NCBI GenBank assembly: GCA_965240325.2
Contig: OZ251234.1
Coordinates: 1,488,001-1,552,000, forward strand
Length of the DNA: 64,000 nucleotides
Direction of reading: 5' to 3'
Source: Rebecca billardiae RCC1528
Taxonomy: Eukaryota; Protista; Haptophyta
The notes below the pieces were generated by a model. It was given only the letters and a program-made list of their open reading frames with translations. It was not told the origin of the DNA and did not search any database. The position numbers and the translations under genes were made by a program. Shown piece after piece: positions 17,075 to 42,797 of the stretch; position 1 is the first letter of the stretch, and every line of letters starts with the position of its first letter.

Positions 17075-20000
17075 TCACGCGCTGTACGCATCGTCGGCGC
17101 TATCCTCGTCGTCACCGCTGCCGCCGTCATCTGCCGGGGCGTGCCGCGGCTGCCACGCTGCCGGGTCCTGTGCGCCCGCCTCACCACCGGCACGCACCTC
17201 GGAGGCGGGCGGCTCGGCCCGGTCGGTCGGCGCCAGCGCTCGGTCGGTCAGCTGGGCCGCTGACTCGTCCGTCCCCGGCTCCACCAGCCACTGTGCCCGC
17301 TCGATCGCCTGGGCAAACTCGGCCTGCCCCTCGCCCCGGGCAGACGAGCTCGAGCCTGCGCCCGAGCAGCTGCCGAGGAAGCGCGCGCGCCGCAGTGCGG
17401 GCGGCGTGGTGCGCACGGGCGTCGTCAGGTCGGTCGTGCTCGAGGTGCGCTGCGTCGGCGCGGGCGGGCGCGGAGGGTCGATGCCGTCGTACAGCGTCGA
17501 GCCGCCCCCCAGGCTGCGCTGGCTCCCGAATGACGCGCTGTTCAGCCGGGGGGGGCGAGGCAACGGCGCGACGCGCTCGGCGGCTCCGAACGGCGGCGCT
17601 GGCGAGGAGGACAGTCGGCGTGCGGCGGTCGCCGGCGCGCACGCGCTTGCGTCCGACGGCATCACGTCCCGTGGCGGGGGCGGGCGGATGCGCGCGCGTG
17701 GCGTGGCGGGCTCGTCCACGCCGTGACGCCCGCCGAGCGTCCGATCGGTCGAGCTGCGCGAGAAGGCCGGTGGCGGCGGCTCTGCCGCGCTCCGCACCCC
17801 CACAGCCTTGGCCCCGCCTGCGGTCGATTCGCGCGCGTCACGCTCAGCACCGAGCTGGCGCAGCTGGCGCGCCCAGCGGCCGCACAGCCAGACGACGGCA
17901 CCGAGGAGCAGCGCGTGGTACACGATGATCGCAGCGGCGATCGTGCCCTGCTCGGCGGGCGAGAGCGCGCCCAAGCCCGCGTCGGCGCCACTCAGCTGTG
18001 CGGCGGAGGCTCCGGCCGTGCCGCCGTCGTCAGGGCAGCTCAAGTCACTCGCCGCGTCGCCGCCGCACTCGCCACACGCGTCGATCTCCTTGCCAGAGTA
18101 CGCGACGCCGTCGCAGCCGTTGCAGCTGGCGCCCTCGCCGTCGCACACGCCGCACGCGTCGACGCTGCCGAGGCACGTGAACTCACAGCTGCCGTCGTCG
18201 AGGCCTGCCTCCGAGTCGTAGTTGAGCGCGGCGGGGTCGAGGCAGCCGCTGGTCGCGAGCCGCACCTGGTCGAGCAAGCTCACGTTCAGAGCGGACTCGA
18301 GGGCGGCGGTGGAGACGTTGGCGAGCGTGCCGAGCACCGAGGCCTGGCCGAACGCCTCGGAGACGTCCACGCCCAGCACGACGAGCACGCTCGCCGCGCG
18401 CACGCTCACAATCTCCAGCCGCTCCTCTGGCAGGCGGAAGATGGAGGCAAAGCCCGAGAGGTACCGGGCGCGCGCGGCCCCGTCGAAGTCGGAGACGTCG
18501 CCGCGGTGCAGAGTGCGGAGGAGCACGCGCGTGCCGCCGCTCGGCGGGAGCGCGGGCGGGTAGGAGGGCGGGCCGGGCGGGCTGGGCGGGCTGGGCGGCG
18601 GGCTGGGCGGCGGCGGGCTGGGCGGCGGGCTGGGCGGCGGCGGGCTGGGCGGCGGGCTGGGCGGCGGGCTGGGCGGCGGCGGGCTCGGCGGCGGGAGCGG
18701 GGGCGGCGAGAAGAAGTCGCAGCCGCCGTCGTCCACGACAGAGCTGGCGTCAAAGTTGCGCGCGGTGCTGTCCGTGCAGCCGGCGTGGCGGCAGCTGCCG
18801 TCGTCCGCCGTCGCGTCGCTCACAAAGTTGAGCGCGCGCGTGTCCGTGCAGCCGCGCACCTCGGGTGCGCAGCTGCCGTCGTCGAACGTGGCGGTGGGGT
18901 CGTAGTTGCTTGCGTTGGAGGCGGTGCAGCCAGCGTACGAGCAGCCGCCCGCATGCTCGGTCGCGCCCGAGGCCCAGTTCCACGCGAGCGAGTCGGTGCA
19001 GCCGCTGACGCCGAAGACGCACTGCGCGGTCACGTCGCCCGTCGTCGCGCCGCTGTCGTAGTTGAGCGCGGCGGGCGCGGTGCAGCCGAGCACGGCGTAC
19101 ACGCACGAGCCGTCGTCGAGCGTCGCCGCAGAGTCGTAGTTGAGCGCGGCCGTGTCTGCGCAGCCGTCGACAGGCGAGACGCACGAAGCGTCGCTCTCGG
19201 TCGCGCTCGAGTCGAAGTTGCTCGCGTCGCTGTCCGTGCAGCCCGCGTGTACGCAGCTGCCGTCGTCGACCGACGCGCCCGGCTGGAAGTTGGTCGCCCC
19301 GCTCTCCGTGCAGCCGCTGAGCGGCGCCAGGCAGCTGCCGTCCTCGTCGGTTGCGCTCGGGTCGAAGTTGGCGGCGCTCGAGTCCGTGCAGCCGAGCAGG
19401 ACGCACGAGCCGTCGTCCGCCTCGGCGGCGCTGTCGTAGTTCGCCGCGGCCGGCTCGGTGCAGCCGCTCGGTGGCAGCACGCACCCGCCGTCGGTGTAGG
19501 TCGCCACGCTGTCGAAGTTGGCCGCGGCCGAGTCGGTGCAGCCGCCGAGCTCGCACGTGCCGTCGTCCGCGGTCGCGTCGGCCGCGTAGTTGTCCGCGGC
19601 CGAGTCGGTGCAGCCCGCGACTTCGAACGCGCACGAGCCATCGTTGAACGTCGCCGTCGAGTCGTAGTTGCGCGCGGCCGAGTGCGCGCAGCCCGCATAC
19701 TCGCACGCGGCCGAGCTGGCGTTGGTCCCGTTGGCCAGCGGGTCGTAGTTGTCCGCGGCCGAGTCCGGGCATGCCGCCTCCGCCTCGGCGAGCGCGCGCG
19801 CGCCTCGGCCGTCGAGTCGGCGGCGCGCGGCGGCGTACACGCACGAGCCGACCTCGTGCGTGGTGGCGCTCGAGTCGTAGTTGTCCGCGCTGGGCGACAT
19901 GCAGCCCGCCACCGCGTCGACGCAGCCGCCGTCGTCGGCCGTCGCGCCGGGCCGAAAGTTGAGCGCGCTGCTGTCGGTGCAGCCGAGCACGCCGAACGCG

Positions 20001-23000
20001 CAGCTGCCGTCCGTGCGCGTGGCGCTCGGGTCGAAGTTGAGCGCGGCCGTCGACATGCAGCCGGGCACGTCGGGCACGCAGCTGCCGTCGTCGGCCGTGG
20101 CGGAGGGCTTGAAGTTGAGCGCGGCGCTGTCCGTGCAGCCGCGCACGCCAAACACGCACGAGCCGCTGTCGCGCGTCGCGGACGAGTCGTAGTTGAGCGC
20201 GGCCGTGGCCATGCAGCCGAGCACGGGCTGCTCGCAGCTGCCGTCGTCGACGCCCGCCTCCGAGCGGTAGTTCCGCGCGGCCGAGTCGGTGCAGCCCGAG
20301 AGTGGGAACGTGCAGCTGCCGTCGTTCACCGTCGCGCTCGAGTCGAAGTTGGCGGCACACGGCACGGTGCAGCCGGCGACCGCGGCGACGCACCGCCCGT
20401 TGTCCGTGTTGGCGCTCGGCTTGTAGTTGGTCGCGGTCGAGTCGGTGCAGCCCAGGATTGGGAACACGCAGCTCCCGTCCGACGTGGTGGCCATGGACGC
20501 GTAGTTGAGCGCGGCCGGCGAGGTGCAGCCCGGAGCGGGCAGGATGCAGCTGCCGTCGTCCGCGCCGTATGCCGAGCCATAGTTGGGCGCTGCCGAGTCG
20601 GTGCAGCCGCGCAGCACGTACTCACAGCGCTCTCGCGCGGGCACGGTCGCGGCGGAGTCGTAGTTCGAGGCAGCGGGGTCCATGCAACCGGCCTTTGAGT
20701 GGGCGCAGCTGCCGTCGTCGGCCGTCGCCGCGCCGCGGTAGTTGAGCGCGCTGCTGTTGGTGCAGCCGGCGACCGCATACGCGCAGTCGCTCAGCAGCAC
20801 CGCGCGGCTGTCGTAGTTGAGTGCGAGAGAGTCCCGGCAGCCGAGCACCGGCGGCGGTGAGGGCGAGGGCGGCGGGGGCGGCTGGCTCGGCGGGGACGGC
20901 GGCGGCGACGGCGGCGCGGAGGGCGGCGGCGGCGGGAAGGGCGACACGCGAGGCGGCGGCGGCGGGCGAGGCGGCGGGCTCGGCGGCAGGGAAGGCGGCG
21001 GGGAGGGCGGCGGGCTGGGCGGCGGCGGGCTCGGCGGCGGGCTCGGCGGCGGGCTCGGCGGCGGGCTCGGCGGCGGGGAGGGCGGCGGGCTGGGCGGCGG
21101 GCCGGGCGGCGGGCTGGGAGGCGGGCTGGGCGGTGGTGGGCTGGGCGGCGGCGATGGGGGCGGGCTGGGCGGCGGCGATGGGGGCGGGTTCGGCGGTGGC
21201 GAAGGCGGCGGGCTTGGTGGCGGGCTGGGCGGCGGCGATGGCGGCGGCGGGCTGGGCGGCGGGCTGGGCGGCGGGCTCGGCGGCGGGCTGGGCGGCGGGC
21301 TGGGCGGCGGGCTCGGCGGCGGGCTCGGAGGCGGCGACGGCGGTGGGCTCGGTGGCGGCGGGCTTGGCGGCGGGCTTGGCGGTGGCGAGGGCGGCGGGCC
21401 CGGTGGAGGGCTCGGTGGCGGGCTTGGCGGTGGCGATGGCGGCGGCAATGGCGGCTGGCTTGGCGGTGGCGGGCTCGGAGGTGGGGACGGAGGTGGGCTC
21501 GGTGGCGGGCTCGGCGGTGGGCTCGGCGGCGGCGATGGTGGCGGGCGCGGTGGCGGGCTCGGCGGCGGCGAGGGTGGAGGGCTTGGCGGTGGCGACGGCG
21601 GTGGCGATGGCGGCGGGCTTGGCGGTGGTGGGCTCGGCGGTGGCGATGGTGGCGAGGCCGGAGGTGGACTGGGCGGGGGCGATGGTGGCGGGGGAGAGGG
21701 CGGCGGGCTAGGCGGCGGGCTGGGCGGCGGGCTTGGAGGCGGGCTGGGCGGTGGATGGGGCGGTGGGCTCGGCGGCGGGCTCGGCGGAGGCAAGGGTGGC
21801 GGGCTCGGCGGCGGCGAGGGCGGCGGCGAGGGCGGCGGAATCGGTGGCGGCGGGGAGGGGGGTGGCGAAGGCGGTGGGCTCGGCGGTGGGCTCGGCGGCG
21901 GTGAAGGCGGTGGCAAAGGGGGTGGCGATGGTGGCGGGCTCGGCGGCGGCGATGGCGGTGGCGATGGTGGCGGTGATGGGGGCGGAGAGGGTGGCGGAGA
22001 GGGCGGCGGGCTTGGTGGCGGCGACGGTGGCGGGCTTGGCGGTGGGCTTGGTGGTGGCGGGCTCGGCGGTGGGCTCGGTGGCGGCGATGGAGGTGGCGAT
22101 GGGGGAGGGCTCGGCGGCGGCGGGCTTGGCGGCGGGCTCGGCGGAGGCGAGGGCGGAGGTGAGGGCGGCGGGCTCGGTGGCGGTGATGGCGGCGGCGATG
22201 GTGGCGGCGAGGGCGGCGGGCTGGGCGGCGGCGATGGCGGTGGATGCGGCGGCGGAGATGGCGGCGGGCTTGGCGGCGGGCCGGGTGGCGGCGACGGCGG
22301 CGGGCTCGGCGGCGGCGACGGCGGCGGCGGCGACGGCGGCGGCGAAGGTGGCGGGCTGGGTGGCGGGCTTGGTGGCGGCGATGGTGGCGGGCTCGGTGGC
22401 GGGCTTGGCGGCGGTCGCGGTGGTGGTGAGGGCGGCGGGCTTGGCGGCGGCGAGGGTGGCGGACTTGGGGGCGGGCTTGGCGGCGGCGGGCTTGGTGGCG
22501 GCGACGGCGGCGGACTCGGCGGCGGCGATGGTGGCGGCGAAGGCGGTGGCTTCGGTGGCGGACTGGGCGGCGGCGACGGTGGCGGGCTTGGCGGCGGTGG
22601 GCTCGGCGGTGGAGAGGGAGGCGGTGACGGCGGCGGGCTTGGCGGCGGGGAGGGTGGCGGGCTCGGCGGTGGGCTCGGCGGCGGGCTCGGCGGGGGGCTC
22701 GGTGGTGGACTTGGCGGAGGCGAGGGCGGCGGTGAAGGCGGCGGACTCGGTGGCGGCGGCGAGGGAGGTGGCGAGGGCGGTGGGCTCGGCGGTGGACTCG
22801 GCGGCGGTGAAGGCGGCGGACTCGGGGGTGGACTTGGCGGAGGAGAAGGTGGTGGTGAGGGCGGCGGGCTCGGCGGCGGTGATGGCGGTGGGCTTGGCGG
22901 CGGGCTTGGCGGCGGCGGGCTTGGCGGTGGGCTAGGTGGTGGCGAGGGTGGCGGCGATGGCGGAGGGCTCGGCGGCGGTGGGCTTGGCGGCGGGCTCGGC

Positions 23001-38000: not shown

Positions 38001-41000
38001 GGCGATGGCGGCGGAGAGGGCGGCGGCGATGGCGGCGGTGGGCTCGGTGGCGGGCTCGGCGGTGGGCTCGGTGGCGGCGACGGCGGCGGCAGCGGAGGCG
38101 GCGGGCTCGGCGGTGGCGCCGGTGGCGGGCTCGGCGGCGGGCTGGGCGGCGGGCTGGGCGGCGGGCTGGGCGGCGGCACGGGCGGCGGGCTGGGCGGCGG
38201 CGATGGCGGCGGCGGCGATGGCGGCGGGCTCGGCGGAGGGCTGGGCGGCGGCGAGGGCGGCGGGCTCGGCGGCGGCGAGGGCGGCGGGCTCGGTGGCGGC
38301 GAGGGTGGCGGGCTCGGCGGCGGGCTCGGCGGCGGGCTTGGCGGCGGCGAGGGCGGCGGGCGCGGCGGCGCCGGCGGTGGGAAGGGAAACTGTCGCGGCG
38401 GCGGTGGCGGCAGCGGCGGCGGGGAGGGCGGTGGCGAGGGCGGCGGGGAGGGCGGTGGGCTGGGGGGGGGAGCAGGGGGGGGAGAGGGCGGCGGTGATGG
38501 CGGCGTCGACGGTGGCGGCGGGCTGGGGGGCGGCGAGGGTGGTGGGCTCGGCGGCGGCGACGGCGGCGGCGACGGCGGTGGCGACGGCGGCGGGCTGGGC
38601 GGTGGCGACGGTGGCGGCGGGCTGGGCGGCGGGGAAGGCGGTGGCGATGGTGGTGGGCTCGGGGGCGGCGTGGGCGGTGGGGGGCTCGGCGGTGGACTCG
38701 GCGGCGGGCTTGGTGGCTGCGTCGGCGGTGGCGCCGGTGGCGGCGGGCTCGGCGGCGGCGAGGGCGGCGGTGATGGCGGCGGAATCGGCGGAGGCGATGG
38801 CGGTGGTGAGGGCGGCGGGCTCGGCGGCGGGCTCGGCGGCGGCGTGGGCGGCGGGCTCGGCGGCGGCGAGGGCGGCGGCGGCGAGGGCGGTGGTGAGGGC
38901 GGCGGGCTAGGCGGCGGGCTGGGCGGCGGTGAGGGCGGCGGTGAGGGCGGCGGGCTGGGCGGTGCCGAGGGCGGCGGCGAGGGCGGCGGGCTCGGCGGCG
39001 GGCTCGGAGGCGGTAGCGGCGGCGGCGGCGAGCGCGCGGTGCCCTGCAGGTCGATCAAGCTGAGCCCCTGCGTGTACACGGCGCTCACCTCCGCGGCGGT
39101 CAGCACGCCCGTGTACACGCCCACGTCGTCGATCGCCCCCGAGAACTGGTCGCTGCTCGAGGCGACGGACGTGCACAGCTTGAGCGCGCTCGCCCCCGTG
39201 CTGAGCGCCGCGCCGAGCGCGCGCGTGCCGTACTTGCCGCCGTGCGCCGCGCCGCCGTCGACGGCGAAGGAGAGCGTGGTCACGCCGTCGTACGTGACGG
39301 CGGCGTGTATCCACACGCCCGCGCTGCGCCCGTCCTCCCCGGAGCCCTCCGTCGCGCCGCAGTGCGTGTTCGCGATCCCGCCCGCCCACACGCACAGCCC
39401 GGCGCTCGTCGACACCAACACGTCAAATTGACCGTTGGTCACGCCCGGACTGCCCCACGAGACGACGGAGTCGGCGCCGCCGCCGCCCGCGCGCTTGAAC
39501 CACACCATCACCGAGCGCGCCACGGAGCCGCCGAGGGTTCCCGCCGCGACCGCACCGTCGCCCGTCGCCGAGTCCGCCGAGCCGCACTGCAGCGCAGAGC
39601 CAATCCGCCCCTCGGCCGGGCTGCTCTGCGACGCGCCCGCGCTGAGCGTGAGGCCGATGGCGGCGGGGCCGAGGTCGAGGCCGGGCATGCCGGACGCGTC
39701 GAAGGCGTAGTGGTGCTGCAGGCTCGCCGCGACGGGCGGCGGCGGGCTCGGCGGCGGCGGCGGCGGCGCGGGCGGCGGGCTGGGCGGCGGAGCGGGCGGC
39801 GGTGGGCTCGGCGGCGGCGAGGGCGGCGGGCTTGGCGGCGGGCTCGGCGGCGGGCTCGGCGGCGGCAGCGGCGGCGGCGGGCTGGGCGGCGGGCTGGGCG
39901 GCGGCAGCGGCGGCGGCGGCGCGAGCGCCGCCCCGGTCAGATCGAGCCCGCTCGCCGCGTTGCTCACGATCGTCGCCAGCTGCGCCGCGGTGAGCACCCC
40001 GTAGAAAATACCCACGTCGTCCAGCTCGCCTCGGAAGAAGTCCGGTAGGAATCCGGCGGTGGGGCCTCCGACCGAGAGCACCGTGCTCGCGCCGTTGCCC
40101 GTGTTGAGCGCGCGCGCCTGGCTCACGCTCAGCGCGCCGTCCCGGTAGATCCGCACGTCCGAGCCGTCGTACGTCACGGCGACGTGCAGCCACACAGAGG
40201 CGCCCACCGCACCCGCCTGCGTGCCCGCGCCGAGGAACCCAAAGTGCGCCACGAGCACGTCGCTGCTCAGCCCGAGCTCGAAGGCCTGCGCCGAGGCGGC
40301 CGAGCCGTACGAGAGCGCGGCGGGCTGCTCGCCCGTCCCCGTCGCGTTGAGCCGCAGCCACAGCGCCACCGAGCGCGCCGCCGCGCCCGAGATCGTGTCA
40401 GTAAGGCCTGCGGGCGCGCTCAGCCGTGTGGAGCCGTCCAGCTGTAGCGCGCGCCCGACGCGGCCGTCGTCGGCGTACGCGACGGCGCCCGAGGCGAGGG
40501 TGAGCCCGTCCACCTGCCCGTTCAGGCTGTACTGCGCGAGCAGCGCCGCGGCGGGCGCCGCCGACGAGTCACCGTTCGCCGACACCTCCGCAAGGCCGTT
40601 GGAGTAGAGAGATGCCGCCTGCGTCGAGTTGAGCGCGGCCGAGTAGAGCGCCACGTCGTCGAGCAGGCCGGTCCAGCGCTGCGTGCGGACGAGGCCGGCG
40701 CAGACGTACAAGAACTCGCCCTGCGTCTCGAGGCTCGTCGACGACGCGCTCGCGCGCTCGACGCCGTCCAGAAAGAGCGTCGTCGTGGTGCTCGGCGCGT
40801 CATATGCGACAGCGACGTGGTACCAGCTGCTGCCGTCGTAGCTGAGCAGGCCGGAGGCGGTCGTGAGCAGCGAGGCGAAGAAGTTGGGGTAGAAGGTGAG
40901 CCCGCCGTTTGTCAGCGCGCGCAGCTCGAAGTACGCGTTGCCCGACGCGAAGCCCGGGCCCACTGCCGCGATGCCCACCTCCTGGCTGAGCGATGTCGAC

Positions 41001-41356
41001 GGCGGCCGCAGCCAGAGCGAGAGGGTCTTGGAGGCCGAGCCGCCGTTGAACTCGGGGATCGCGTCGCTCCCGCCGTCATCCTTCTCGAGCGTGACCCCAG
41101 AGCAGTCGACGGCCTCGCCGATCTGGCCGGTCGCGTACGCGACGGTACCGGACTGCACGGCGAGCGCGCTCGGACCGCTCAGTGCCGAGGTGAGGTCCTC
41201 GTCGAGCTGGTAGAGGTAGGCGAGCGAGCTCGAGGAGGCGTGGTGCACGGGGACGCGTGAAGCGAAGAGCACGAGTGCGAGGAGACCGCGGGCAGTGCTG
41301 AGCACCGCCGGCGTGCGCGCGCGCCGCGCCTGCGGCGCAGCAGCCGGTGCAGCCAT
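17075..41356 (-). CDS. Giant (~8,093 aa) predicted type I membrane glycoprotein: signal peptide, 3 LamG-like domains, ~6,000-aa (SPPP/SPPPP)n, 28 GCxD..NYD..AT.DDGSC repeats, Cys-rich segment, TM helix, cytoplasmic tail
   Basis: Uninterrupted 24.3-kb ORF from ATG 41356. N-terminal hydrophobic GLLALVLFA. Three W.H.AV.YD...G.(L/I)DDV..(Y/F)...L concanavalin/LamG motifs at ~40600-41230, ~39950-40540 and ~39050-39720. TM segment IAAAIIVYHALLLGAVVWLCG at ~17880-17945. Confidence 0.9.
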   Translation of the reverse strand: MAAPAAAPQARRARTPAVLSTARGLLALVLFASRVPVHHASSSSLAYLYQLDEDLTSALSGPSALAVQSGTVAYATGQIGEAVDCSGVTLEKDDGGSDAIPEFNGGSASKTLSLWLRPPSTSLSQEVGIAAVGPGFASGNAYFELRALTNGGLTFYPNFFASLLTTASGLLSYDGSSWYHVAVAYDAPSTTTTLFLDGVERASASSTSLETQGEFLYVCAGLVRTQRWTGLLDDVALYSAALNSTQAASLYSNGLAEVSANGDSSAAPAAALLAQYSLNGQVDGLTLASGAVAYADDGRVGRALQLDGSTRLSAPAGLTDTISGAAARSVALWLRLNATGTGEQPAALSYGSAASAQAFELGLSSDVLVAHFGFLGAGTQAGAVGASVWLHVAVTYDGSDVRIYRDGALSVSQARALNTGNGASTVLSVGGPTAGFLPDFFRGELDDVGIFYGVLTAAQLATIVSNAASGLDLTGAALAPPPPLPPPSPPPSPPPPLPPPSPPPSPPPSPPPSPPPSPPPPAPPPSPPPAPPPPPPSPPPPVAASLQHHYAFDASGMPGLDLGPAAIGLTLSAGASQSSPAEGRIGSALQCGSADSATGDGAVAAGTLGGSVARSVMVWFKRAGGGGADSVVSWGSPGVTNGQFDVLVSTSAGLCVWAGGIANTHCGATEGSGEDGRSAGVWIHAAVTYDGVTTLSFAVDGGAAHGGKYGTRALGAALSTGASALKLCTSVASSSDQFSGAIDDVGVYTGVLTAAEVSAVYTQGLSLIDLQGTARSPPPPLPPPSPPPSPPPSPPPSAPPSPPPSPPPSPPPSPPPSPPPSPPPSPPPPSPPPSPPPTPPPSPPPSPPPSPPPSPPPIPPPSPPPSPPPSPPPPAPPPTQPPSPPPSPPPSPPPPTPPPSPPPSPPPSPPPSPPPPSPPPSPPPSPPPSPPPSPPPSPPPSPPPSPPPPSTPPSPPPSPPPAPPPSPPPSPPPSPPPSPPPLPPPPPRQFPFPPPAPPRPPPSPPPSPPPSPPPSPPPSPPPSPPPSPPPSPPPSPPPSPPPSPPPSPPPPSPPPSPPPVPPPSPPPSPPPSPPPSPPPAPPPSPPPPLPPPSPPPSPPPSPPPSPPPPSPPPSPPPSPPPSPPPSPPPPSPPPSPPPSPPPSPPPSPPPSPPPSPPPSPPPLPPPSPPPSPPPSPPPSPSPPSPPPSPPPSPPPSPPPSPPPPSPPPSPPPSPPPSPPPSPPPSPPPSPPPRPPPSPPPSPPPPSPPPSPPPSPPPSPPPSPPPPAPPPSPPPSPPPSPPPSPPPRPPPSPPPSPPPSPPPPSPPPSPPPSPPPSPPPSPPPARPPSPPPSPPPSPPPPSPPPSPPPSPPPSPPPSPPPPNPPPSPPPSPPPSPPPSPPPSPPPSPPPSPPPSPPPPGAPPSPPPSPPPYPPPSPPPSPPPSPPPSPPPSPPPPSPPPSPPPSPPPSPPPSPPPPSPPPSPPPSPPPSPPPSPPPSPPPSPPPSPPPSPPPPSPPPSPPPSPPPSPPPSPPPPSPPPSPPPSPPPFPPPSPPPSPPPSPPPSPPPSPPPPSPPPSPPPSPPPSPPPSPPPPSPPPSPPPSPPPSPPPSPPPPSPPPSPPPSPPPSPPPSPPPSPPPSPPPLPPPSPPPPSPPPSPPPRPPPSPPPSPPPPSPPPSPPPFPPPSPPPSPPPSPPPSPPPSPPPSPPPPSPPPSPPPSPPPSPPPSPPPPSPPPSPPPSPPPSPPPSPPPSPPPSPPPSPPPSPPPPSPPPSPPPSPPPSPPPSPPPSPPPSPPPSPPPSPPPPSPPPSPPPSPPPSPPPSPPPPSPPPSPPPSPPPSPPPSPPPSPPPSPPPSPPPSPPPPSPPPSPPPSPPPSPPPSPPPAPPPSPPPSPPPSPPPPSPPPSPPPSPPPSPPPSPPPSPPPSPPPSPPPSPPPSPPPSPPPSPPPSPPPPSPPPSPPPSPPPSPPPSPPPSPPPLPPPSPPPSPPPPSPPPSPPPSPPPSPPPSPPPSPPPSPPPSPPPSPPPPSPPPSPPPSPPPSPPPSPPPSPPPSPPPSPPPSPPPPSPPPSPPPSPPPSPPPSPPPSPPPSPPPSPPPSPPPPSPPPSPPPSPPPSPPPSPPPPSPPPSPPPSPPPRPPPSPPPSPPPSPPPSPPPSPPPPSPPPSPPPSPPPSPPPSPPPSPPPSPPPSPPPSPPPPSPPPSPPPSPPPSPPPSPPPSPPPSPPPSPPPSPPPPSPPPSPPPSPPPSPPPSPPPFPPPSPPPSPPPSPPPPSPPPSPPPSPPPSPPPSPPPSPPPSPPPSPPPSPPPPSPPPSPPPSPPPSPPPSPPPPSPPPSPPPSPPPSPPPSPPPSPPPSPPPSPPPSPPPPSPPPSPPPSPPPSPPPSPPPPSPPPSPPPSPPPSPPPSPPPSPPPSPPPSPPPSPPPPSPPPSPPPSPPPSPPPSPPPPSPPPSPPPSPPPSPPPSPPPSPPPSPPPSPPPSPPPPSPPPSPPPNPPPSPPPSPPPPSPPPSPPPSPPPSPPPSPPPSPPPSPPPSPPPSPPPPSPPPSPPPSPPPNPPPSPPPSPPPSPPPSPPPSPPPPSPPPSPPPSPPPSPPPSPPPSPPPSPPPSPPPSPPPSPPPSPPPSPPPSPPPPSPPPSPPPSPPPSPPPSPPPSPPPSPPPSPPPSPPPPSPPPSPPPSPPPSPPPSPPPSPPPSPPPSPPPSPPPSPPPSPPPSPPPSPPPPSPPPSPPPSPPPSPPPSPPPSPPPSPPPSPPPSPPPSPPPSPPPSPPPSPPPPSPPPSPPPSPPPSPPPSPPPSPPPSPPPSPPPSPPPPSPPPSPPPSPPPSPPPSPPPSPPPSPPPSPPPSPPPSPPPSPPPSPPPSPPPPSPPPSPPPSPPPSPPPSPPPSPPPSPPPSPPPSPPPSPPPSPPPSPPPSPPPPSPPPSPPPSPPPSPPPSPPPSPPPSPPPSPPPSPPPPSPPPSPPPSPPPSPPPSPPPSPPPSPPPSPPPSPPPSPPPNPPPSPPPSPPPPSPPPSPPPSPPPSPPPSPPPSPPPSPPPSPPPSPPPSPPPSPPPSPPPSPPPPSPPPSPPPSPPPSPPPSPPPSPPPSPPPSPPPSPPPPSPPPSPPPSPPPSPPPSPPPSPPPSPPPSPPPSPPPSPPPSPPPSPPPSPPPPSPPPSPPPSPPPSPPPSPPPSPPPSPPPSPPPSPPPPSPPPSPPPSPPPSPPPSPPPSPPPSPPPSPPPSPPPPSPPPSPPPSPPPGPPPSPPPSPPPSPPPSPPPSPPPSPPPSPPPSPPPSPPPPSPPPSPPPSPPPSPPPSPPPPSPPPSPPPSPPPSPPPSPPPSPPPSPPPSPPPSPPPGPPPSPPPSPPPSPPPPSPPPSPPPSPPPSPPPSPPPSPPPSPPPSPPPSPPPPSPPPSPPPSPPPSPPPSPPPSPPPSPPPSPPPSPPPPSPPPSPPPSPPPSPPPSPPPSPPPSPPPSPPPSPPPPSPPPSPPPSPPPSPPPSPPPSPPPSPPPSPPPSPPPSPPPSPPPSPPPSPPPPSPPPSPPPSPPPSPPPSPPPSPPPSPPPSPPPSPPPPSPPPSPPPSPPPSPPPSPPPSPPPSPPPSPPPSPPPGPPPSPPPSPPPSPPPPSPPPSPPPSPPPSPPPSPPPSPPPSPPPSPPPSPPPPSPPPSPPPSPPPSPPPSPPPSPPPSPPPSPPPSPPPSPPPSPPPSPPPSPPPPSPPPSPPPSPPPSPPPSPPPSPPPSPPPSPPPSPPPSPPPSPPPSPPPSPPPPSPPPSPPPSPPPSPPPSPPPSPPPSPPPSPPPSPPPSPPPSPPPSPPPSPPPPSPPPSPPPSPPPSPPPSPPPSPPPSPPPSPPPSPPPPSPPPSPPPSPPPSPPPSPPPSPPPSPPPSPPPSPPPSPPPNPPPSPPPSPPPPSPPPSPPPSPPPSPPPSPPPSPPPGPPPSPPPSPPPSPPPSPPPSPPPSPPPPSPPPSPPPLPPPSPPPSPPPSPPPSPPPSPPPSPPPPSPPPSPPPSPPPSPPPSPPPSPPPSPPPSPPPSPPPSPPPSPPPSPPPSPPPPSPPPSPPPSPPPNPPPSPPPSPPPSPPPSPPPSPPPSPPPSPPPSPPPSPPPPSPPPSPPPSPPPSPPPSPPPSPPPSPPPSPPPSPPPPSPPPSPPPSPPPSPPPSPPPSPPPSPPPSPPPSPPPPSPPPSPPPSPPPSPPPSPPPSPPPSPPPFPPPSPPPSPPPSPPPSPPPSPPPPSPPPSPPPSPPPSPPPSPPPSPPPSPPPSPPPSPPPPSPPPNPPPSPPPSPPPSPPPSPPPSPPPSPPPSPPPSPPPSPPPSPPPSPPPPSPPPSPPPSPPPSPPPSPPPSPPPSPPPSPPPSPPPSPPPSPPPSPPPSPPPPSPPPSPPPSPPPSPPPSPPPSPPPSPPPSPPPSPPPPSPPPSPPPSPPPSPPPSPPPSPPPSPPPSPPPSPPPSPPPSPPPSPPPSPPPPSPPPSPPPSPPPSPPPSPPPSPPPSPPPSPPPSPPPSPPPSPPPSPPPSPPPPSPPPSPPPSPPPSPPPSPPPSPPPSPPPSPPPSPPPPSPPPSPPPSPPPSPPPSPPPSPPPSPPPSPPPSPPPSPPPSPPPSPPPSPPPPSPPPSPPPSPPPSPPPSPPPSPPPSPPPSPPPSPPPPSPPPSPPPSPPPSPPPSPPPSPPPSPPPSPPPSPPPPSPPPSPPPSPPPSPPPSPPPSPPPSPPPSPPPSPPPSPPPSPPPSPPPSPPPSPPPSPPPSPPPSPPPPSPPPSPPPSPPPSPPPSPPPSPPPSPPPSPPPSPPPSPPPSPPPSPPPSPPPPSPPPSPPPSPPPSPPPSPPPSPPPSPPPSPPPSPPPPSPPPSPPPSPPPSPPPSPPPSPPPSPPPSPPPSPPPSPPPSPPPSPPPSPPPPSPPPSPPPSPPPSPPPSPPPSPPPSPPPSPPPSPPPPSPPPSPPPSPPPSPPPSPPPSPPPSPPPSPPPSPPPPSPPPSPPPSPPPSPPPSPPPSPPPSPPPSPPPSPPPSPPPSPPPSPPPSPPPSPPPSPPPSPPPSPPPPSPPPSPPPSPPPSPPPSPPPSPPPSPPPSPPPSPPPPSPPPSPPPSPPPSPPPSPPPSPPPSPPPSPPPSPPPPSPPPSPPPSPPPSPPPSPPPSPPPSPPPSPPPSPPPSPPPSPPPSPPPSPPPSPPPSPPPSPPPSPPPPSPPPSPPPSPPPSPPPSPPPSPPPSPPPSPPPSPPPPSPPPSPPPSPPPSPPPSPPPSPPPSPPPSPPPSPPPPSPPPSPPPSPPPSPPPSPPPSPPPSPPPSPPPSPPPSPPPSPPPSPPPSPPPSPPPSPPPSPPPSPPPPSPPPSPPPSPPPSPPPSPPPSPPPSPPPSPPPSPPPSPPPSPPPSPPPSPPPPSPPPSPPPSPPPSPPPSPPPSPPPSPPPSPPPSPPPPSPPPSPPPSPPPSPPPSPPPSPPPSPPPAPPPSPPPSPPPSPPPSPPPSPPPSPPPSPPPSPPPSPPPPSPPPSPPPSPPPSPPPSPPPSPPPSPPPSPPPSPPPSPPPSPPPSPPPSPPPPSPPPSPPPSPPPSPPPSPPPSPPPSPPPSPPPSPPPPSPPPSPPPSPPPSPPPSPPPSPPPSPPPSPPPSPPPSPPPSPPPSPPPSPPPSPPPSPPPSPPPSPPPPSPPPSPPPSPPPSPPPSPPPSPPPSPPPSPPPSPPPSPPPSPPPSPPPSPPPPSPPPSPPPSPPPSPPPSPPPSPPPSPPPSPPPSPPPPSPPPSPPPSPPPSPPPSPPPSPPPSPPPSPPPSPPPSPPPSPPPSPPPSPPPSPPPSPPPSPPPSPPPPSPPPSPPPSPPPSPPPSPPPSPPPSPPPSLPPSPPPSPPPSPPPSPPPSPPPSPPPSPPPSPPPSPPPPSPPPSPPPSPPPSPPPSPPPSPPPSPPPSPPPSPPPPSPPPSPPPSPPPSPPPSPPPSPPPSPPPNPPPSPPPSPPPSPPPSPPPSPPPPSPPPSPPPSPPPSPPPSPPPSPPPSPPPSPPPSPPPSPPPSPPPSPPPSPPPSPPPSPPPSPPPSPPPPSPPPSPPPSPPPSPPPSPPPSPPPSPPPSPPPSPPPPSPPPSPPPSPPPSPPPSPPPSPPPSPPPSPPPSPPPPSPPPSPPPAPPPSPPPSPPPSPPPSPPPSPPPSPPPSPPPSPPPSPPPSPPPSPPPSPPPSPPPSPPPPSPPPSPPPSPPPSPPPSPPPPSPPPSPPPSPPPSPPPSPPPSPPPSPPPSPPPSPPPSPPPSPPPSPPPSPPPPSPPPSPPPSPPPSPPPSPPPSPPPSPPPSPPPSPPPSPPPSPPPSPPPSPPPPSPPPSPPPSPPPKPPPSPPPSPPPSPPPSPPPSPPPPSPPPSPPPSPPPSPPPSPPPRPPPSPPPSPPPSPPPSPPPSPPPSPPPSPPPPSPPPSPPPSPPPGPPPSPPPSPPPHPPPSPPPSPPPSPPPSPPPSPPPSPPPSPPPSPPPSPPPSPPPPSPPPSPPPSPPPSPPPSPPPPSPPPSPPPSPPPSPPPSPPPSPPPSPPPSPPPSPPPSPPPSPPPLPPPSPPPSPPPSPPPSPPPSPPPPIPPPSPPPSPPPSPPPLPPPSPPPSPPPHPPPSPPPSPPPSPPPSPPPSPPPPSPPPSPPPASPPSPPPSPPPPSPPPSPPPSPPPSPPPSPPPSPPPRPPPSPPPSPPPSPPPSPPPSPPPSPPPPSQPPLPPPSPPPSPPPSPPPGPPPSPPPSPPPSPPPPSPPPSPPPSPPPSPPPSPPPSPPPSPPPSPPPSPPPPSPPPSPPPSPPPSPPPNPPPSPPPSPPPSPPPSPPPPSPPPSPPPGPPPSPPPSPPPSPPPSPPPSPPPSPPPPSPPPSPPPSLPPSPPPRPPPPPRVSPFPPPPPSAPPSPPPSPPSQPPPPPSPSPPPVLGCRDSLALNYDSRAVLLSDCAYAVAGCTNSSALNYRGAATADDGSCAHSKAGCMDPAASNYDSAATVPARERCEYVLRGCTDSAAPNYGSAYGADDGSCILPAPGCTSPAALNYASMATTSDGSCVFPILGCTDSTATNYKPSANTDNGRCVAAVAGCTVPCAANFDSSATVNDGSCTFPLSGCTDSAARNYRSEAGVDDGSCEQPVLGCMATAALNYDSSATRDSGSCVFGVRGCTDSAALNFKPSATADDGSCVPDVPGCMSTAALNFDPSATRTDGSCAFGVLGCTDSSALNFRPGATADDGGCVDAVAGCMSPSADNYDSSATTHEVGSCVYAAARRRLDGRGARALAEAEAACPDSAADNYDPLANGTNASSAACEYAGCAHSAARNYDSTATFNDGSCAFEVAGCTDSAADNYAADATADDGTCELGGCTDSAAANFDSVATYTDGGCVLPPSGCTEPAAANYDSAAEADDGSCVLLGCTDSSAANFDPSATDEDGSCLAPLSGCTESGATNFQPGASVDDGSCVHAGCTDSDASNFDSSATESDASCVSPVDGCADTAALNYDSAATLDDGSCVYAVLGCTAPAALNYDSGATTGDVTAQCVFGVSGCTDSLAWNWASGATEHAGGCSYAGCTASNASNYDPTATFDDGSCAPEVRGCTDTRALNFVSDATADDGSCRHAGCTDSTARNFDASSVVDDGGCDFFSPPPLPPPSPPPPSPPPSPPPSPPPPSPPPSPPPPSPPPSPPSPPGPPSYPPALPPSGGTRVLLRTLHRGDVSDFDGAARARYLSGFASIFRLPEERLEIVSVRAASVLVVLGVDVSEAFGQASVLGTLANVSTAALESALNVSLLDQVRLATSGCLDPAALNYDSEAGLDDGSCEFTCLGSVDACGVCDGEGASCNGCDGVAYSGKEIDACGECGGDAASDLSCPDDGGTAGASAAQLSGADAGLGALSPAEQGTIAAAIIVYHALLLGAVVWLCGRWARQLRQLGAERDARESTAGGAKAVGVRSAAEPPPPAFSRSSTDRTLGGRHGVDEPATPRARIRPPPPRDVMPSDASACAPATAARRLSSSPAPPFGAAERVAPLPRPPRLNSASFGSQRSLGGGSTLYDGIDPPRPPAPTQRTSSTTDLTTPVRTTPPALRRARFLGSCSGAGSSSSARGEGQAEFAQAIERAQWLVEPGTDESAAQLTDRALAPTDRAEPPASEVRAGGEAGAQDPAAWQPRHAPADDGGSGDDEDSADDAYSA
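18715..20845 (-). repeat. 27 tandem ~24-28-aa Cys-rich coding repeats (GC[T/M]D..A.N[Y/F]D..AT.DDGSC); a 28th copy lies near 18180-18250
   Basis: Counted by hand in the translation. Confidence 0.9.
20848..39030 (-). repeat. Coding extensin/pherophorin-like Ser-Pro3/Ser-Pro4 array with 429-bp and 477-bp higher-order units
   Basis: 12/15-bp units. Landmarks recur at 32167/32596/33025/33454 and 27631/28060/28489 (429 bp) and at 24581/25058/25535 (477 bp). Confidence 0.95.
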
Positions 41357-42797
41357 GGCTTCCGGCTGCCACCCGCGCTCGCGCGCCTGCAGCTTCGAAG
41401 CAGCGATGAGCTGAAAGCCGCACCGGCCACCGGTCAATGCACAGCTAAATTTGGGCTCCAAACCGCGCCGCGGTTGTTTGTGGTTTCGTCTGGCATAGGT
41501 GGCCGAGTACCCGCATCTGTCGTCAGATACTGTACAGGTAGGCCATCTTGAAACGTCGGGGATCCTTTGCAAGCACGGTGCGCAAACTGCAAAAGCGAGT
41601 CAAAAGCTGCACGTGTACCTGCCTGGCTGCCAGTGCTGCCACCTGGGCTCGGCCTCGGCACGCATGCGGCGAGTGCCGGCGACTCACGACGCCGCGTGCG
41701 CGCCATCAATTCATCACTCTTGAGAGGCTAGTGACCTACTCCTAAAAGATGCGGACCAGCAACGGTCAGCAGGGCGCCAGGCTCATCAGGGCTGCGCGCG
41801 TACGGGCTACGGCGTAGCGCTTACTGGCGCAGCGCAGCCAATAAGGCAGATGGCGTCGACCGATAGTCTCGGTGAGTCGGCTGACGCCGACGGACCGAGC
41901 CCGAGGCGGACATTGCCAATGCCACTTAGTGGCATTGCACATCGCGCTGGGTTACACAGGCTTCCGGTAACACCGCCGGGACGCAGCCGCAGGACGCCGG
42001 ACGGCGGCCTGACGGCTGACTCACCCGTCACCGGCCAGGACGGGCCTCGTAGCTGGGCAGACGGCCAGGCCGCAGAGTCCGCAGACCGCTGCCAGGCAGT
42101 TGTGTCATGCGTTAGTGTACGCGTGTGTCGTGTCACGTGTGCGGCCGCGAGTGGCGACCGGCGTGTCCGTCACTCCGTGACCGCGTGCGTGACACGGCAC
42201 GACAGCCGGACGTGGAGGGACGTCGAAGTCGAAACGACGCGTCGCTTCGTCGTGGATTGTCGTCACTGAGTCATTGCAGGGCCGCGCCGACGATCGTGCG
42301 GACGAGCCGGTGAGCCGCGTGCGTGATGCATCCGGTCCGGAGTCCGGACGAGCTGCCCGGACGAGCGTCGGGGCTTGCTGCCACAGCGCAGACGAAGGCA
42401 CCGAGCGCGGGCCATGGGAGCTGTGAGGCAAAGGGGGTCGCTCTGGTCGTGTGGCGGTGTGCGCTGCGCAGCTTGGAGCTGGATTCGAGCGCGGCGGCAC
42501 GGCGGGGCCGAGCCTTCGCCGGCCGGCGGCCGCGTGCACCGTCGTCGTCGTACACCCATCCCCGGCCGAGACCGCGAGCGCGCGCGCGAGCGCTGGCGTG
42601 GAGGCGCGGGCGGCCGGCGCCGATCGGACCGCGCCTGTGCTGGCATGGCGGCGCGGGCGGCCGGCGCCAATCCGGCCGCACCTGGGTGGATCCGCGTTGG
42701 GCCACGCGCGCGCGCACTGCCCGCACGCGGCTGAGCGCCAGCACGGCGTATGGCCGCGCGGCCGGCTGCCGCGGCGCACGCGGCGTCGGCCACGCGG

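What the first reader, a model, noticed from the sequence alone, without database searches (positions are those of the whole stretch)
17075..41356. Giant membrane-anchored lectin-on-a-stalk: ~6,000-aa polyproline rod, potentially ~1.9 micrometres long
Seen: a single 24-kb ORF with signal peptide, three LamG-like domains, ~6,060 aa of SPPP/SPPPP, 28 Cys repeats, one TM helix and a tail. Established: SPn motifs are hydroxyproline-glycosylation substrates in plant extensins and volvocine pherophorins, and polyproline II rises ~0.31 nm per residue. Inference: one polypeptide could form a micrometre-scale surface filament tipped with glycan-binding domains, a candidate for fine hairs, scale-associated fibres, adhesion, prey capture or a virus decoy. 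An extensin-like array of this size in what appears to be a non-green alga would be remarkable.
Basis: partly seen in the sequence, partly recalled or inferred. Interest (0 to 1): 0.8.

Follow-up and report, generated by a model that had tools for sequence, protein, structure and literature searches.

The report
Giant membrane-anchored Ser-Pro rod protein
A very GC-rich, haptophyte-like alga has one unbroken 24-kb gene for a 778-kDa surface protein: three LamG-type binding heads on a 6,000-residue Ser-Pro-Pro-Pro stalk, tied to the membrane through a mucin-style SEA-like domain, but no data yet show that it is expressed.

Summary
A minus-strand ORF runs from ATG 41356 to the stop at 17075-17077 (8,093 aa). 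In order it has:
- a signal peptide;
- three Laminin_G_3 domains, each above Pfam's cut-off;
- a 6,003-aa array of 1,257 SPPP and 142 SPPPP units;
- 27+1 two-cysteine modules;
- one TM helix and a 266-aa tail.

New here:
- The membrane-proximal domain is SEA-like by fold and has an invariant Ser in an [G/A]-S-V-x-V-V motif.
- The Cys module is the "truncated EGF-like" module of perforin-2/MPEG1.
- Two ADAMTS-type CGxC motifs follow.

The array is constrained as protein. All six Ser codons are used, 155 different 12-mers occur, and only 1.2% of residues are not Ser or Pro. There is no frameshift in 18 kb.

Most of the array is too diverged to be an assembly expansion. About 6 kb of 429/477-bp higher-order repeats (95-99.6% identical) still needs spanning reads.

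Paralogs share the head, with rods of about 300-6,000 aa. Paralog C14 has the same end-to-end layout, which argues for one gene.

"Lectin", hydroxyproline glycosylation, the 1.9-µm length and expression are all untested; no RNA run exists.

The scan has already noted giant SPPP-rod surface proteins at other loci of this genome, so this is one member of a class. Its rod is the longest single uninterrupted one among the earlier notes I read.

The parts
17075..41356 (-). Whole coding sequence: ATG at 41356, stop at 17075-17077, 8,093 aa, no stop and no frameshift
   Evidence: GC3 is 0.93-0.95 against GC2 0.56-0.64 in the non-repeat ectodomain parts (tail 0.86 against 0.70), the signature of coding sequence in this frame
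41234..41356 (-). Probable signal peptide (aa 1-~41): RRAR n-region, hydrophobic GLLALVLFA, then VHHA/SSSS
   Evidence: Read from the sequence; similar leaders in paralog C24 and in P0004; no signal-peptide predictor was available
40619..41056 (-). Laminin_G_3 domain 1 (aa 101-246)
   Evidence: Pfam PF13385, E 4.1e-19, 69.7 bits against cut-off 27.6
39977..40390 (-). Laminin_G_3 domain 2 (aa 323-460)
   Evidence: Pfam PF13385, E 8.4e-17; weak PDB sequence matches to arabinanase and S-layer accessory domains
39734..39922 (-). Short Ser-Pro linker between LamG2 and LamG3 (aa 479-541)
   Evidence: Its Pro codons are 82% CCG and 4% CCA, unlike the big array
39083..39550 (-). Laminin_G_3 domain 3 (aa 603-758)
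   Evidence: Pfam PF13385, E 5.1e-13
20957..38965 (-). Ser-Pro array, aa 798-6800: 1,257 SPPP + 142 SPPPP + ~67 variant units, with one ~40-aa irregular Pro-rich stretch at aa 950-991
   Evidence: All six Ser codons used, 155 distinct 12-mers, non-Ser/Pro residues 0-23 per 500 aa, third-position diversity 0.55-0.64 in every bin
23959..28459 (-). Younger zone of the array: 429/477-bp (143/159-aa) higher-order repeats, mostly 90-98.6% identical (two 500-bp windows 87-90%)
   Evidence: TRF periods 429 and 477
31959..33459 (-). Youngest zone of the array: about four 429-bp copies at 95.5-99.6% identity (most windows 99.2-99.6%), the part most open to a copy-number error
   Evidence: the longest exact repeat in the array is 473 bp
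18707..20842 (-). 27 two-cysteine modules of ~24-26 aa (G-C-T-D-S-x-A-x-N-Y-D-x-x-A-T-x-D-D-G-S-C), aa 6839-7550, in two blocks
   Evidence: AF2 model of four modules has pLDDT 94.6. The same module is in perforin-2/MPEG1 res 329-354. More than 7,000 database proteins carry it
19772..19834 (-). Conserved basic linker (A-R-R-R-L ... A-R-A-L) between the two Cys-module blocks, aa 7175-7195
   Evidence: Also present in paralog C14, so it is coding and not an intron; a cleavage role is inference only
18551..18706 (-). Second short Ser-Pro linker (aa 7551-7602)
18248..18535 (-). SEA-like juxtamembrane domain (aa 7608-7703), beta-alpha-beta-beta-alpha-beta
   Evidence: AF2 pLDDT 86. VIA-align top rows include dystroglycan, cadherin-23 and PCDH15 membrane-adjacent domains, MUC16 SEA, TMPRSS6 and IA-2 at Z 6.5-9.6. 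Weaker Foldseek hits are of the same kinds. The module is in ~35 giant ORFs of this genome
18389..18391 (-). Ser7656, invariant in 12 paralogous domains, in the motif A-S-V-L-V-V at the beta2-beta3 turn
   Evidence: Alignment A1. MUC1 cleaves at G/SVVV and MUC16 has DSVLV (PMC4456727). Cleavage was not tested here
18179..18247 (-). 28th Cys module, directly after the SEA-like domain (aa 7704-7726)
   Evidence: the SEA-like plus one-module pairing is kept in all 12 aligned paralogs
18041..18172 (-). Two CGxC-type Cys-rich motifs (D-A-C-G-V-C-D-G-E-G-A-S-C and D-A-C-G-E-C-G-G-D), aa 7729-7772
   Evidence: Homologs found with this stretch match the last 25-30 positions of Pfam ADAMTS_CR_3; this protein's own stretch gave no Pfam hit
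17879..17944 (-). Single transmembrane helix (aa 7805-7826), followed by basic residues
   Evidence: Kyte-Doolittle maximum 2.34 over 19 aa; the only such segment apart from a SEA-like beta strand
17078..17875 (-). Cytoplasmic tail of 266 aa, low complexity, Pro/Arg/Ser-rich with an acidic end
   Evidence: only weakly similar to the C14 tail (27% identity)

Best explanation
This is one intact, intron-free gene for a type I membrane protein built like a cross between a plant/algal hydroxyproline-rich glycoprotein and an animal transmembrane mucin. After removal of the signal peptide, three LamG-type jelly-roll heads sit at the far end. They are carried on a ~6,000-residue Ser-Pro3-4 array that most likely adopts polyproline-II geometry and is probably hydroxylated and O-glycosylated in the Golgi. 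The array joins a second, disulfide-stapled stalk of 27 mini-modules. An SEA-like domain, one more module, two CGxC knots, one TM helix and a 266-aa cytoplasmic tail follow. The likely role is a very long surface fibril, part of the cell coat or a flagellar or body 'hair'. It would hold binding heads hundreds of nanometres to at most ~1.9 µm from the membrane, for adhesion or capture of a still unknown ligand. The SEA-like domain may serve as a mechanical or proteolytic release point next to the membrane. Shown: the ORF, the domains, protein-level constraint on the array, the paralog family, and growth of the array by in-frame tandem duplication. Inferred: rod geometry, glycosylation, location, ligand, cleavage and expression.
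For: One frame links all parts. Three Laminin_G_3 domains pass Pfam's cut-off. The array is constrained as protein: 98.8% Ser/Pro, both the AGY and TCN Ser codon families (AGC 658, TCG 404, TCA 156, AGT 85, TCC 44, TCT 21), 155 different 12-mers, third-position diversity ~0.6 in every 500-aa bin, and no frameshift in 18 kb. It is not a collapsed or expanded perfect repeat: 68% of 31-mers and 89% of 151-mers are unique. The flanks of the array are only 75-84% identical to any other part. All internal offsets are multiples of 3. Head paralogs carry rods of ~300 to ~6,000 aa. Paralog C14 has the same full order from heads to tail, with 56% identity in the juxtamembrane part, so head and anchor belong to one gene. 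The Cys module is modelled with confidence and matches the perforin-2 EGF-like module. The genome holds many members of the enzyme families that hydroxylate and arabinosylate such motifs in plants: 54 PF13640 matches, 42 GT77 and 64 GT47. Precedents are the outward-facing heads on Chlamydomonas agglutinin fibrils (PMC2113723) and a Ser-(Pro)3-4 protein in E. huxleyi (PMC10290126).
Against: There is no expression evidence. No RNA run holds the locus, and the single run found gave only one perfect 219-bp contig. At 80% GC a long open frame is cheap, and the plus strand also has a 6,204-aa ORF. Head divergence from paralog C24 gives dN/dS about 0.66, which is only modest purifying selection. The head family has a single good outside relative, at 41% identity and without a giant rod; the tools mask the source genome and its near kin, so absence is weak evidence. 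The SEA-like Z-scores (~8) lie near the tool's stated noise level, Pfam SEA does not match, and the residue before the Ser is Ala, not Gly. P4H, GT77 and GT47 are broad families, so their presence does not show Hyp-arabinosylation. About 6 kb of the array is 95-99.6% identical higher-order repeat whose copy number could be wrong.
Confidence: 0.6

Rival explanations
1. The gene is real but the mature product is much shorter. Either part of the array is removed as one or more stop-free GC-rich introns, or the assembled copy number of the young 429/477-bp repeats is inflated or varies between cells.
For: No RNA data exist. Other family members do have introns: the C15 ORFs end inside the juxtamembrane region, and the C14 head is split over two frames. 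About 6 kb of the array is 95-99.6% identical higher-order repeat.
Against: Every 500-aa bin shows the same tight Ser/Pro constraint and third-position diversity, with no frameshift, which intronic DNA would not keep. More than half of the array's 500-bp windows have no other copy above 85% identity. The assembly has 41 contigs for 72 Mb, which suggests long reads. Even without every young repeat, about 12 kb (~4,000 aa) remains.
Confidence: 0.15
2. The protein works mainly as a shed or matrix-forming coat polymer, a mucin-like barrier or a scale or wall scaffold, and not as a membrane-held binding stalk. Cleavage at the SEA-like domain or at the conserved A-R-R-R-L linker would release the rod, and the LamG heads would link it to other matrix polymers.
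For: The SEA-like domain with an invariant Ser sits next to the membrane, as in MUC1 and MUC16 (PMC4456727). The basic linker is conserved in paralog C14. SPPP-coding sequence is extremely abundant in the genome, as expected for a bulk coat material. An E. huxleyi Ser-(Pro)3-4 protein is proposed to act in base-plate assembly (PMC10290126).
Against: Ala, not Gly, precedes the Ser, so autoproteolysis is doubtful. The long cytoplasmic tail and the TM helix suggest the protein stays at the membrane or signals. The array has no Tyr cross-link motifs.
Confidence: 0.2
3. The locus is not a working gene. It would be a Ser-Pro-coding satellite that expanded inside a decaying or silent family member, and the frame is open only because the sequence is so GC-rich.
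For: Stop codons are rare at 80% GC, and the opposite strand is also open for 6,204 aa. There is no expression evidence. dN/dS of the head against C24 is 0.66.
Against: Neutral decay would bring frameshifts and first- and second-position changes; only 70 of 6,003 codons are not Ser or Pro. The use of both Ser codon families points to selection on the amino acid. The heads, Cys modules, SEA-like domain and TM are all intact with GC3 far above GC2. Synonymous differences exceed the neutral share (93 against 72 expected, my chi-square about 8.5 from the figures).
Confidence: 0.05

Closest known systems
Chlamydomonas sexual agglutinins and related flagellar HRGP fibrils (cane-shaped molecules; PMC2113723)
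   Same: A globular head faces outward on a long hydroxyproline-rich, polyproline-type shaft whose base is at the (flagellar) membrane. The head is thought to carry recognition and adhesion.
   Different: The agglutinins come from a green alga and, as I recall, have about 3,400-3,900 aa and shafts of a few hundred nm. As I recall they also have no TM helix. Here the array alone has 6,003 aa, the heads are LamG domains, and there is a TM helix, an SEA-like domain and a Cys-module stalk. No sequence homology was tested.
Animal transmembrane mucins (MUC1, MUC13, MUC16, MUC17)
   Same: The order is: giant Pro/Ser-rich, presumably O-glycosylated domain, then small Cys modules flanking an SEA-type domain, then a single TM helix and a cytoplasmic tail. 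The motif A-S-V-L-V-V lies where MUC1 has G/SVVV and MUC16 has DSVLV (PMC4456727). MUC16 SEA domains are among the best fold matches.
   Different: The repeat is a strict Ser-Pro3-4 with almost no Thr, which is plant/algal Hyp chemistry and not GalNAc-Ser/Thr mucin chemistry (inference). Pfam SEA does not match. The tip carries LamG heads. The Cys modules are the perforin-2 type, not classical EGF.
Plant extensins and chimeric extensins (LRX, PERK)
   Same: Repeated Ser-Pro3-5. LRX proteins put a binding head (LRR) on an extensin stalk, and PERKs have a TM helix below an extensin-like ectodomain (from my own knowledge).
   Different: There are no Tyr cross-link motifs (1 Tyr in the array). The array is far longer than those of plant extensins (from my own knowledge). 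The organism is not a green plant. The heads and the anchor are different.
Emiliania huxleyi EhG42278.1, a Ser-(Pro)3-4 repeat protein (PMC10290126)
   Same: A haptophyte protein with Ser-(Pro)3-4 repeats that its authors liken to extensins.
   Different: It is reported as a candidate luminal protein of the coccolith vesicle. Its size and domain layout were not compared here, and no giant rod, LamG head or SEA-like anchor is described.
Other giant SPPP-rod surface proteins noted by this scan in the same genome (s1-346290, s1-371904, s1-343718, s1-341030, s1-338727)
   Same: The same design principle: binding heads, then a Ser-Pro rod, then a membrane base. One of them has arrays of SEA-like domains.
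   Different: Those carry LRR or FG-GAP heads, or polycystin-1-type REJ/GAIN bases, and have rods of ~2,500-3,000 aa each. This one has LamG heads, one uninterrupted ~6,000-aa rod, and a simple SEA-like plus single-TM base.

Membership tests
Laminin_G_3 / concanavalin A-like jelly roll (Pfam PF13385) | Match to the family profile above the gathering score | tested here: met
   Three separate domains at 69.7, 62.1 and 49.9 bits against cut-off 27.6
Lectin (carbohydrate-binding head) | Demonstrated or residue-level predicted sugar binding | not testable with these tools
   Only the fold family is known. There are weak sequence matches to arabinanase and S-layer accessory domains (E 1e-5 to 5e-5)
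Extensin (strict sense) | Repeated Ser-Pro3-5 motifs | tested here: met
   1,257 SPPP and 142 SPPPP units
Extensin (strict sense) | Tyr-containing cross-link motifs (YXY, VYK) between the SPn blocks | tested here: not met
   1 Tyr, 1 Lys and 1 Val in 6,003 aa
Extensin (strict sense) | Secreted wall protein without a membrane anchor | tested here: not met
   Single TM helix at aa 7805-7826 and a 266-aa tail
Hydroxyproline-rich glycoprotein (broad sense) | Prolines hydroxylated and O-glycosylated | not testable with these tools
   The genome has 54 PF13640 (P4H-type), 42 GT77 and 64 GT47 matches. These are broad families. GT95 (HPAT) and GT96 (SGT) were not searched because I had no profile or reference sequence
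SEA domain / SEA-like membrane-adjacent domain | Ferredoxin-like beta-alpha-beta-beta-alpha-beta fold placed next to the TM helix | tested here: met
   AF2 pLDDT 86 with that strand and helix order. Most of the top 20 VIA-align rows are SEA or SEA-like juxtamembrane domains at Z 6.2-9.6. The Z values are near the tool's noise level, so the support lies in this enrichment and in the domain's position
SEA domain / SEA-like membrane-adjacent domain | Match to the Pfam SEA profile | tested here: not met
   No SEA hit at E <= 0.1 on the C-terminal 1,305 aa
SEA domain / SEA-like membrane-adjacent domain | Autoproteolysis at G/S-V-V-V in the beta2-beta3 turn | tested here: inconclusive
   The Ser is invariant in 12 paralogous domains. 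The residue before it is Gly in 3, Ala in 8 (including this protein) and Ser in 1. Cleavage itself cannot be tested here
Transmembrane mucin | Long Pro/Thr/Ser tandem-repeat domain, SEA domain, single TM helix and tail | tested here: inconclusive
   The order of parts matches. The repeat has 4 Thr in 6,003 aa and no sequence homology to mucins, so this is an analogy, not membership
Perforin-2/MPEG1-type 'truncated EGF-like' two-Cys module | Sequence and structure match to MPEG1 res ~329-354 | tested here: met
   Profile matches at E 0.004 and 0.012 with G-C-T-D ... N-F ... D-D-G-S-C aligned. MPEG1 accounts for two of Foldseek's only three PDB rows, at 41% identity over 29 columns but non-significant E (2.1 and 3.7); the third row is unrelated. 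The module is named in PMC6989145
ADAMTS cysteine-rich domain (Pfam PF19236), C-terminal CGxC part | Profile match | tested here: inconclusive
   Six homologs of the stretch match profile positions ~88-115 (E 2e-8 to 8e-16). The window's own stretch gave no hit

The most novel reading that the evidence does not exclude
A single polypeptide forms a micrometre-scale, membrane-anchored surface or flagellar hair of a haptophyte. It would be an extensin-mucin hybrid whose length is tuned by in-frame amplification of 143/159-aa higher-order repeats, whose LamG tip captures a ligand far from the cell, and whose SEA-like domain acts as a force-sensitive release point. It would be one member of a large, undescribed set of 'receptors on a pole' that use interchangeable heads, rods and bases.
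Probability: 0.3. Interest if true: 0.8.

Novelty: new variant of a known kind. Interest (0 to 1): 0.6.

Why it matters
If the gene is expressed as written, it would carry, to my knowledge, one of the longest uninterrupted polyproline-type arrays in any protein. It would be a one-gene candidate for the fine surface or flagellar hairs of haptophytes. It would also show that two designs were combined outside plants and animals: Ser-Pro rods, known from green algae and plants, and SEA-type juxtamembrane modules, known from animal mucins, cadherins and receptors. The paralog series, with the same head on rods from ~300 to ~6,000 aa, is a natural experiment on how stalk length is set and evolves. 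The widespread two-Cys module is shared with marine Bacteroidota T9SS cargo and with perforin-2, has no Pfam name, and has no solved tandem structure. The gene also warns annotators, because automatic pipelines are likely to break or mask genes of this kind.

Tried and rejected
- **Expression.** Laying that run on window 38900-42400 gave one perfect 219-bp contig at 41085-41303 plus short generic Ser-Pro-coding pieces. This says nothing about expression, splicing or array length.
- **Giant orthologs.** A search limited to 4,450-14,160-aa proteins found only generic LamG hits in prokaryotic giants. The head alone found one relative at 41% identity (P0004). A metagenome scan found only weak LamG matches. 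The tools state that the source genome and its near kin may be masked, so I make no claim of absence.
- **Cys region against PDB.** A single-sequence search of the Cys region against PDB chains found nothing. Only the profile searches found MPEG1.
- **Technical failures.** Whole-array self-BLAST returned only the diagonal and was replaced by 500-bp chunks. Alignment A2 of overlapping windows came out staggered and was dropped in favour of A3. One search failed on the server and was rerun.
- **Opposite-strand Gly-rich ORF (20817-39431).** Rejected. The variable sites would fall on its first codon positions, and it has no flanking domains.
- **Intron at the irregular linker between the Cys blocks.** Rejected, because the linker is conserved in paralog C14.
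- **P0148.** It was looked up for an organism clue and turned out to be from a bacterial genome.
- **Organism identity.** Not verified. 'Haptophyte' rests on the Atlas cluster labels and on database hits from Prymnesium, Chrysochromulina and Emiliania. 'Pavlovophyte' comes only from earlier scan notes. The published Diacronema lutheri genome is 43.5 Mb at 73% GC (PMC8379373), so this 72-Mb genome is not that assembly.
Full report
**Observation.** The window is G000:C17:1488001-1552000 of a 72-Mb, 41-contig assembly.
- Composition jumps to ~80% GC with strong GC skew between about 20 and 39 kb.
- The ORF listing shows a minus-strand ORF at 17075..41572 of 8,165 aa. Because the repeat is so GC-rich, the plus strand also carries a 6,204-aa ORF.
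- From the first ATG (41356) the product is 8,093 aa and 778 kDa.
- It starts with a basic and then hydrophobic leader.
- It has three Laminin_G_3 domains, each above Pfam's gathering score (E 4e-19, 8e-17, 5e-13).
- The array at aa 798-6800 has 4,527 Pro, 1,406 Ser and only 70 other residues. It parses into 1,257 SPPP, 142 SPPPP and ~67 variant units.
- It has 27 two-cysteine modules plus one more after the juxtamembrane domain, and a single hydrophobic TM segment followed by basic residues.

**Is the array coding, and in this frame?** Openness alone is not evidence at 80% GC. Four other observations are.
- The array joins the LamG heads to the Cys/TM end in one frame across 18 kb, although 142 units have 15 nt instead of 12.
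- All six Ser codons occur, from both the AGY and TCN families, which are two to three substitutions apart (AGC 658, TCG 404, TCA 156, AGT 85, TCC 44, TCT 21). There are 155 different DNA versions of the SPPP unit.
- In every 500-aa bin, third-position diversity of Pro codons is 0.55-0.64, while non-Ser/Pro residues number 0-23. No part of the array looks relaxed or intronic.
- In the non-repeat ectodomain parts GC3 is 0.93-0.95 against GC2 0.56-0.64, and 0.86 against 0.70 in the tail.

On the opposite strand the variable sites would be first codon positions, so the plus-strand ORF is a by-product.

**Is the array an assembly artefact?**
- 68% of 31-mers, 89% of 151-mers and 93% of 251-mers in the array are unique, and the longest exact repeat is 473 bp.
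- Comparing 500-bp chunks shows satellite-like layering. The edges and large parts of the interior match any other part at only 75-84%.
- Two interior zones (window 23,959-28,459 and 31,959-33,459) are 429/477-bp higher-order repeats (143/159 aa) at about 90-99.6% identity.
- All offsets are multiples of three.
- Most of the 18 kb therefore cannot be produced by assembler expansion. Only the copy number of about 6 kb of young repeats needs spanning reads.
- The array evidently grew by in-frame tandem duplication of 143/159-aa blocks. SPPPP units recur every 5, 9, 13 or 17 units. The scan also recorded this as a separate note on the same stretch (s1-372179).

**The membrane-proximal end.** Pfam and NCBIfam name nothing in the last 1,305 aa.
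- *The Cys module.* It is about 25 aa with two Cys (consensus G-C-T-D-S-x-A-x-N-Y-D-S-x-A-T-x-D-D-G-S-C). More than 7,000 database proteins carry it, including Bacteroidota T9SS cargo and proteins from Prymnesium, Chrysochromulina and Emiliania. Well over 25 other giant ORFs of this genome carry it too.
- Profile searches of PDB sequences find one copy in perforin-2/MPEG1, residues 329-354. That region is described as a truncated EGF-like module (PMC6989145).
- A four-module AF2 model has pLDDT 94.6. MPEG1 accounts for two of Foldseek's only three PDB rows, but at non-significant E-values of 2.1 and 3.7. No tandem array of this module has been solved.
- *The juxtamembrane domain.* The ~100-aa domain between the second Ser-Pro linker and the 28th module occurs in ~35 giant ORFs here.
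- It has an invariant Ser in a [G/A]-S-V-x-V-V motif and models as beta-alpha-beta-beta-alpha-beta with pLDDT 86.
- A Foldseek-independent search puts SEA and SEA-like juxtamembrane domains in most of the top 20 rows. They include CELSR1, dystroglycan, cadherin-23 MAD28, PCDH15 MAD12, MUC16 SEA, TMPRSS6, IA-2 and GPR126, at Z 5.8-9.6.
- Foldseek and the Atlas give weaker hits of the same kinds.
- Z of about 8 is near the tool's noise level. The assignment therefore rests on that enrichment, the domain's position next to the TM helix, and the motif, which aligns with MUC1 GSVVV and MUC16 DSVLV (PMC4456727). I call it SEA-like, not SEA.
- *After the 28th module.* Two CGxC motifs follow. Their database homologs match the end of Pfam ADAMTS_CR_3.

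**Family context.** The head has paralogs on contigs C24, C15 (a head-to-head pair), C14, C12, C7 and C16. Rod lengths are:

| Paralog | Rod length (aa) |
|---|---|
| C17 (this gene) | ~6,000 |
| C24 | ~3,950 |
| C15, plus-strand copy | ~3,450 |
| C14 | ~1,200 |
| C15, minus-strand copy | ~950 |
| C12 | ~350 |
| C7 | ~300 |

(Lengths.)
- C14 repeats the whole order: heads, rod, Cys modules with the same basic A-R-R-R-L linker, SP linker, SEA-like domain, module, CGxC, TM and tail. Identity is 56% in the juxtamembrane part.
- This is the best available argument that head and anchor are one gene. After the array there is also no leader sequence that could start a separate secreted product.
- C24 has the closest head (84% aa identity) but a different C-terminal ectodomain, which shows module shuffling.
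- Array interiors of the paralogs are only 76-79% identical, while the first ~1.5 kb next to the head is 95-96% identical to C24. The rods therefore expanded independently.
- Head dN/dS against C24 is about 0.66. This is weak purifying selection, which is common for surface proteins. It is also partly an effect of constrained GC3.

**Mechanism.**
- Shown: a type I membrane topology by sequence logic, distal LamG heads, and two serial stalk segments.
- Established knowledge: polyproline II rises about 0.31 nm per residue, so the array's contour length is at most 1.86 µm.
- My inference: over such a length the chain will bend. If the persistence length is tens of nm (an assumption), the mean reach would be a few hundred nm and not 1.9 µm.
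- Ser-Pro3-4 is the substrate motif for prolyl 4-hydroxylation, Hyp-arabinosylation and Ser-galactosylation in plants (PMC5371791). Haptophytes have ExAD-like GT47 genes (same paper). This genome has 54 P4H-type, 42 GT77 and 64 GT47 matches. That is consistent with such modification but not specific for it.
- The array has no Tyr, so extensin-type cross-linking is excluded.
- 'Lectin' remains a guess; only weak matches to arabinanase and S-layer accessory domains exist.
- The nearest functional analogues are the Chlamydomonas agglutinin canes, with heads outward and bases at the flagellar membrane (PMC2113723), and the animal transmembrane mucins.

**What is not known.** Expression, splicing, modification, location and ligand are all unknown. 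No RNA run exists in the index. The one run found contributes a single perfect 219-bp contig. Organism identity was not verified here.

**Novelty and score.** Ser-(Pro)3-4 proteins in haptophytes are published (PMC10290126). The scan has already noted several giant SPPP-rod surface proteins at other loci of this genome, one of them with SEA-like domains. SPPP-coding DNA is everywhere in this genome (14,013 first-look places). This gene is therefore a new variant of a known kind, not a new category. Four things distinguish it:
- the longest uninterrupted rod among the earlier notes I read (~6,000 aa in one exon);
- LamG heads;
- a simple SEA-like plus single-TM base;
- a clean paralog series in rod length.

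Interest 0.6.

Noticed in passing
window 20957-38965 compared with the rest of the CDS: Codon use in the giant array differs from the rest of the same gene. CCA is 30% and CCC 10% of Pro codons in the array. In the heads, the C-terminal part and both short Ser-Pro linkers, CCA is 0-12% and CCC 14-44%. TCA is 12% against 2-4%, and GC3 is 0.69 against 0.93. This may limit long C/G runs (G-quadruplex or i-motif formation, slippage) in a very long repeat.
   Followed up: partly
window 19772-19834 (aa 7175-7195): A basic linker (A-R-R-R-L ... A-R-A-L) interrupts the Cys-module array and is conserved in paralog C14. It is a candidate convertase-type processing site.
   Followed up: partly
window 20957-38965: SPPPP units are spaced 9 (65 times), 13 (37), 5 (20) or 17 (12) units apart, that is 5+4k units. 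This matches higher-order periods of 429 and 477 bp. The scan also recorded it as a separate note (s1-372179).
   Followed up: partly
window ~37459-38965 and G000:C24 ~229,760-230,260: The part of the array next to the head is 95-96% identical to the start of paralog C24's array, while the array interiors are 76-79% identical and the heads themselves differ more. This suggests a shared duplication boundary or gene conversion ending inside the rod.
   Followed up: partly
G000:C15:923001-957000 (L018-L021): Two family members lie head to head (minus-strand ORF 3,712 aa, plus-strand ORF 6,172 aa) with near-identical Cys-module blocks but rods of ~950 and ~3,450 aa. Both ORFs end just after the second Ser-Pro linker, probably at an intron.
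   Followed up: no
genome-wide: The two-Cys module, the SEA-like module and SPPP-coding DNA recur in dozens of open frames of 1,600 to 16,357 aa on most contigs. This is a very large repertoire of giant modular surface proteins.
   Followed up: no
database proteins P0029-P0147 and L039: The same two-Cys module is abundant in Bacteroidota T9SS cargo proteins and other bacterial proteins, as well as in haptophytes and in vertebrate perforin-2, yet it has no Pfam family. Its distribution between marine bacteria and algae is unexplained.
   Followed up: no
window 13998-16472 (minus strand): The next ORF downstream (824 aa, 82% GC) has only a sub-threshold match to DUF7650. Its status as a gene is unclear.
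   Followed up: no
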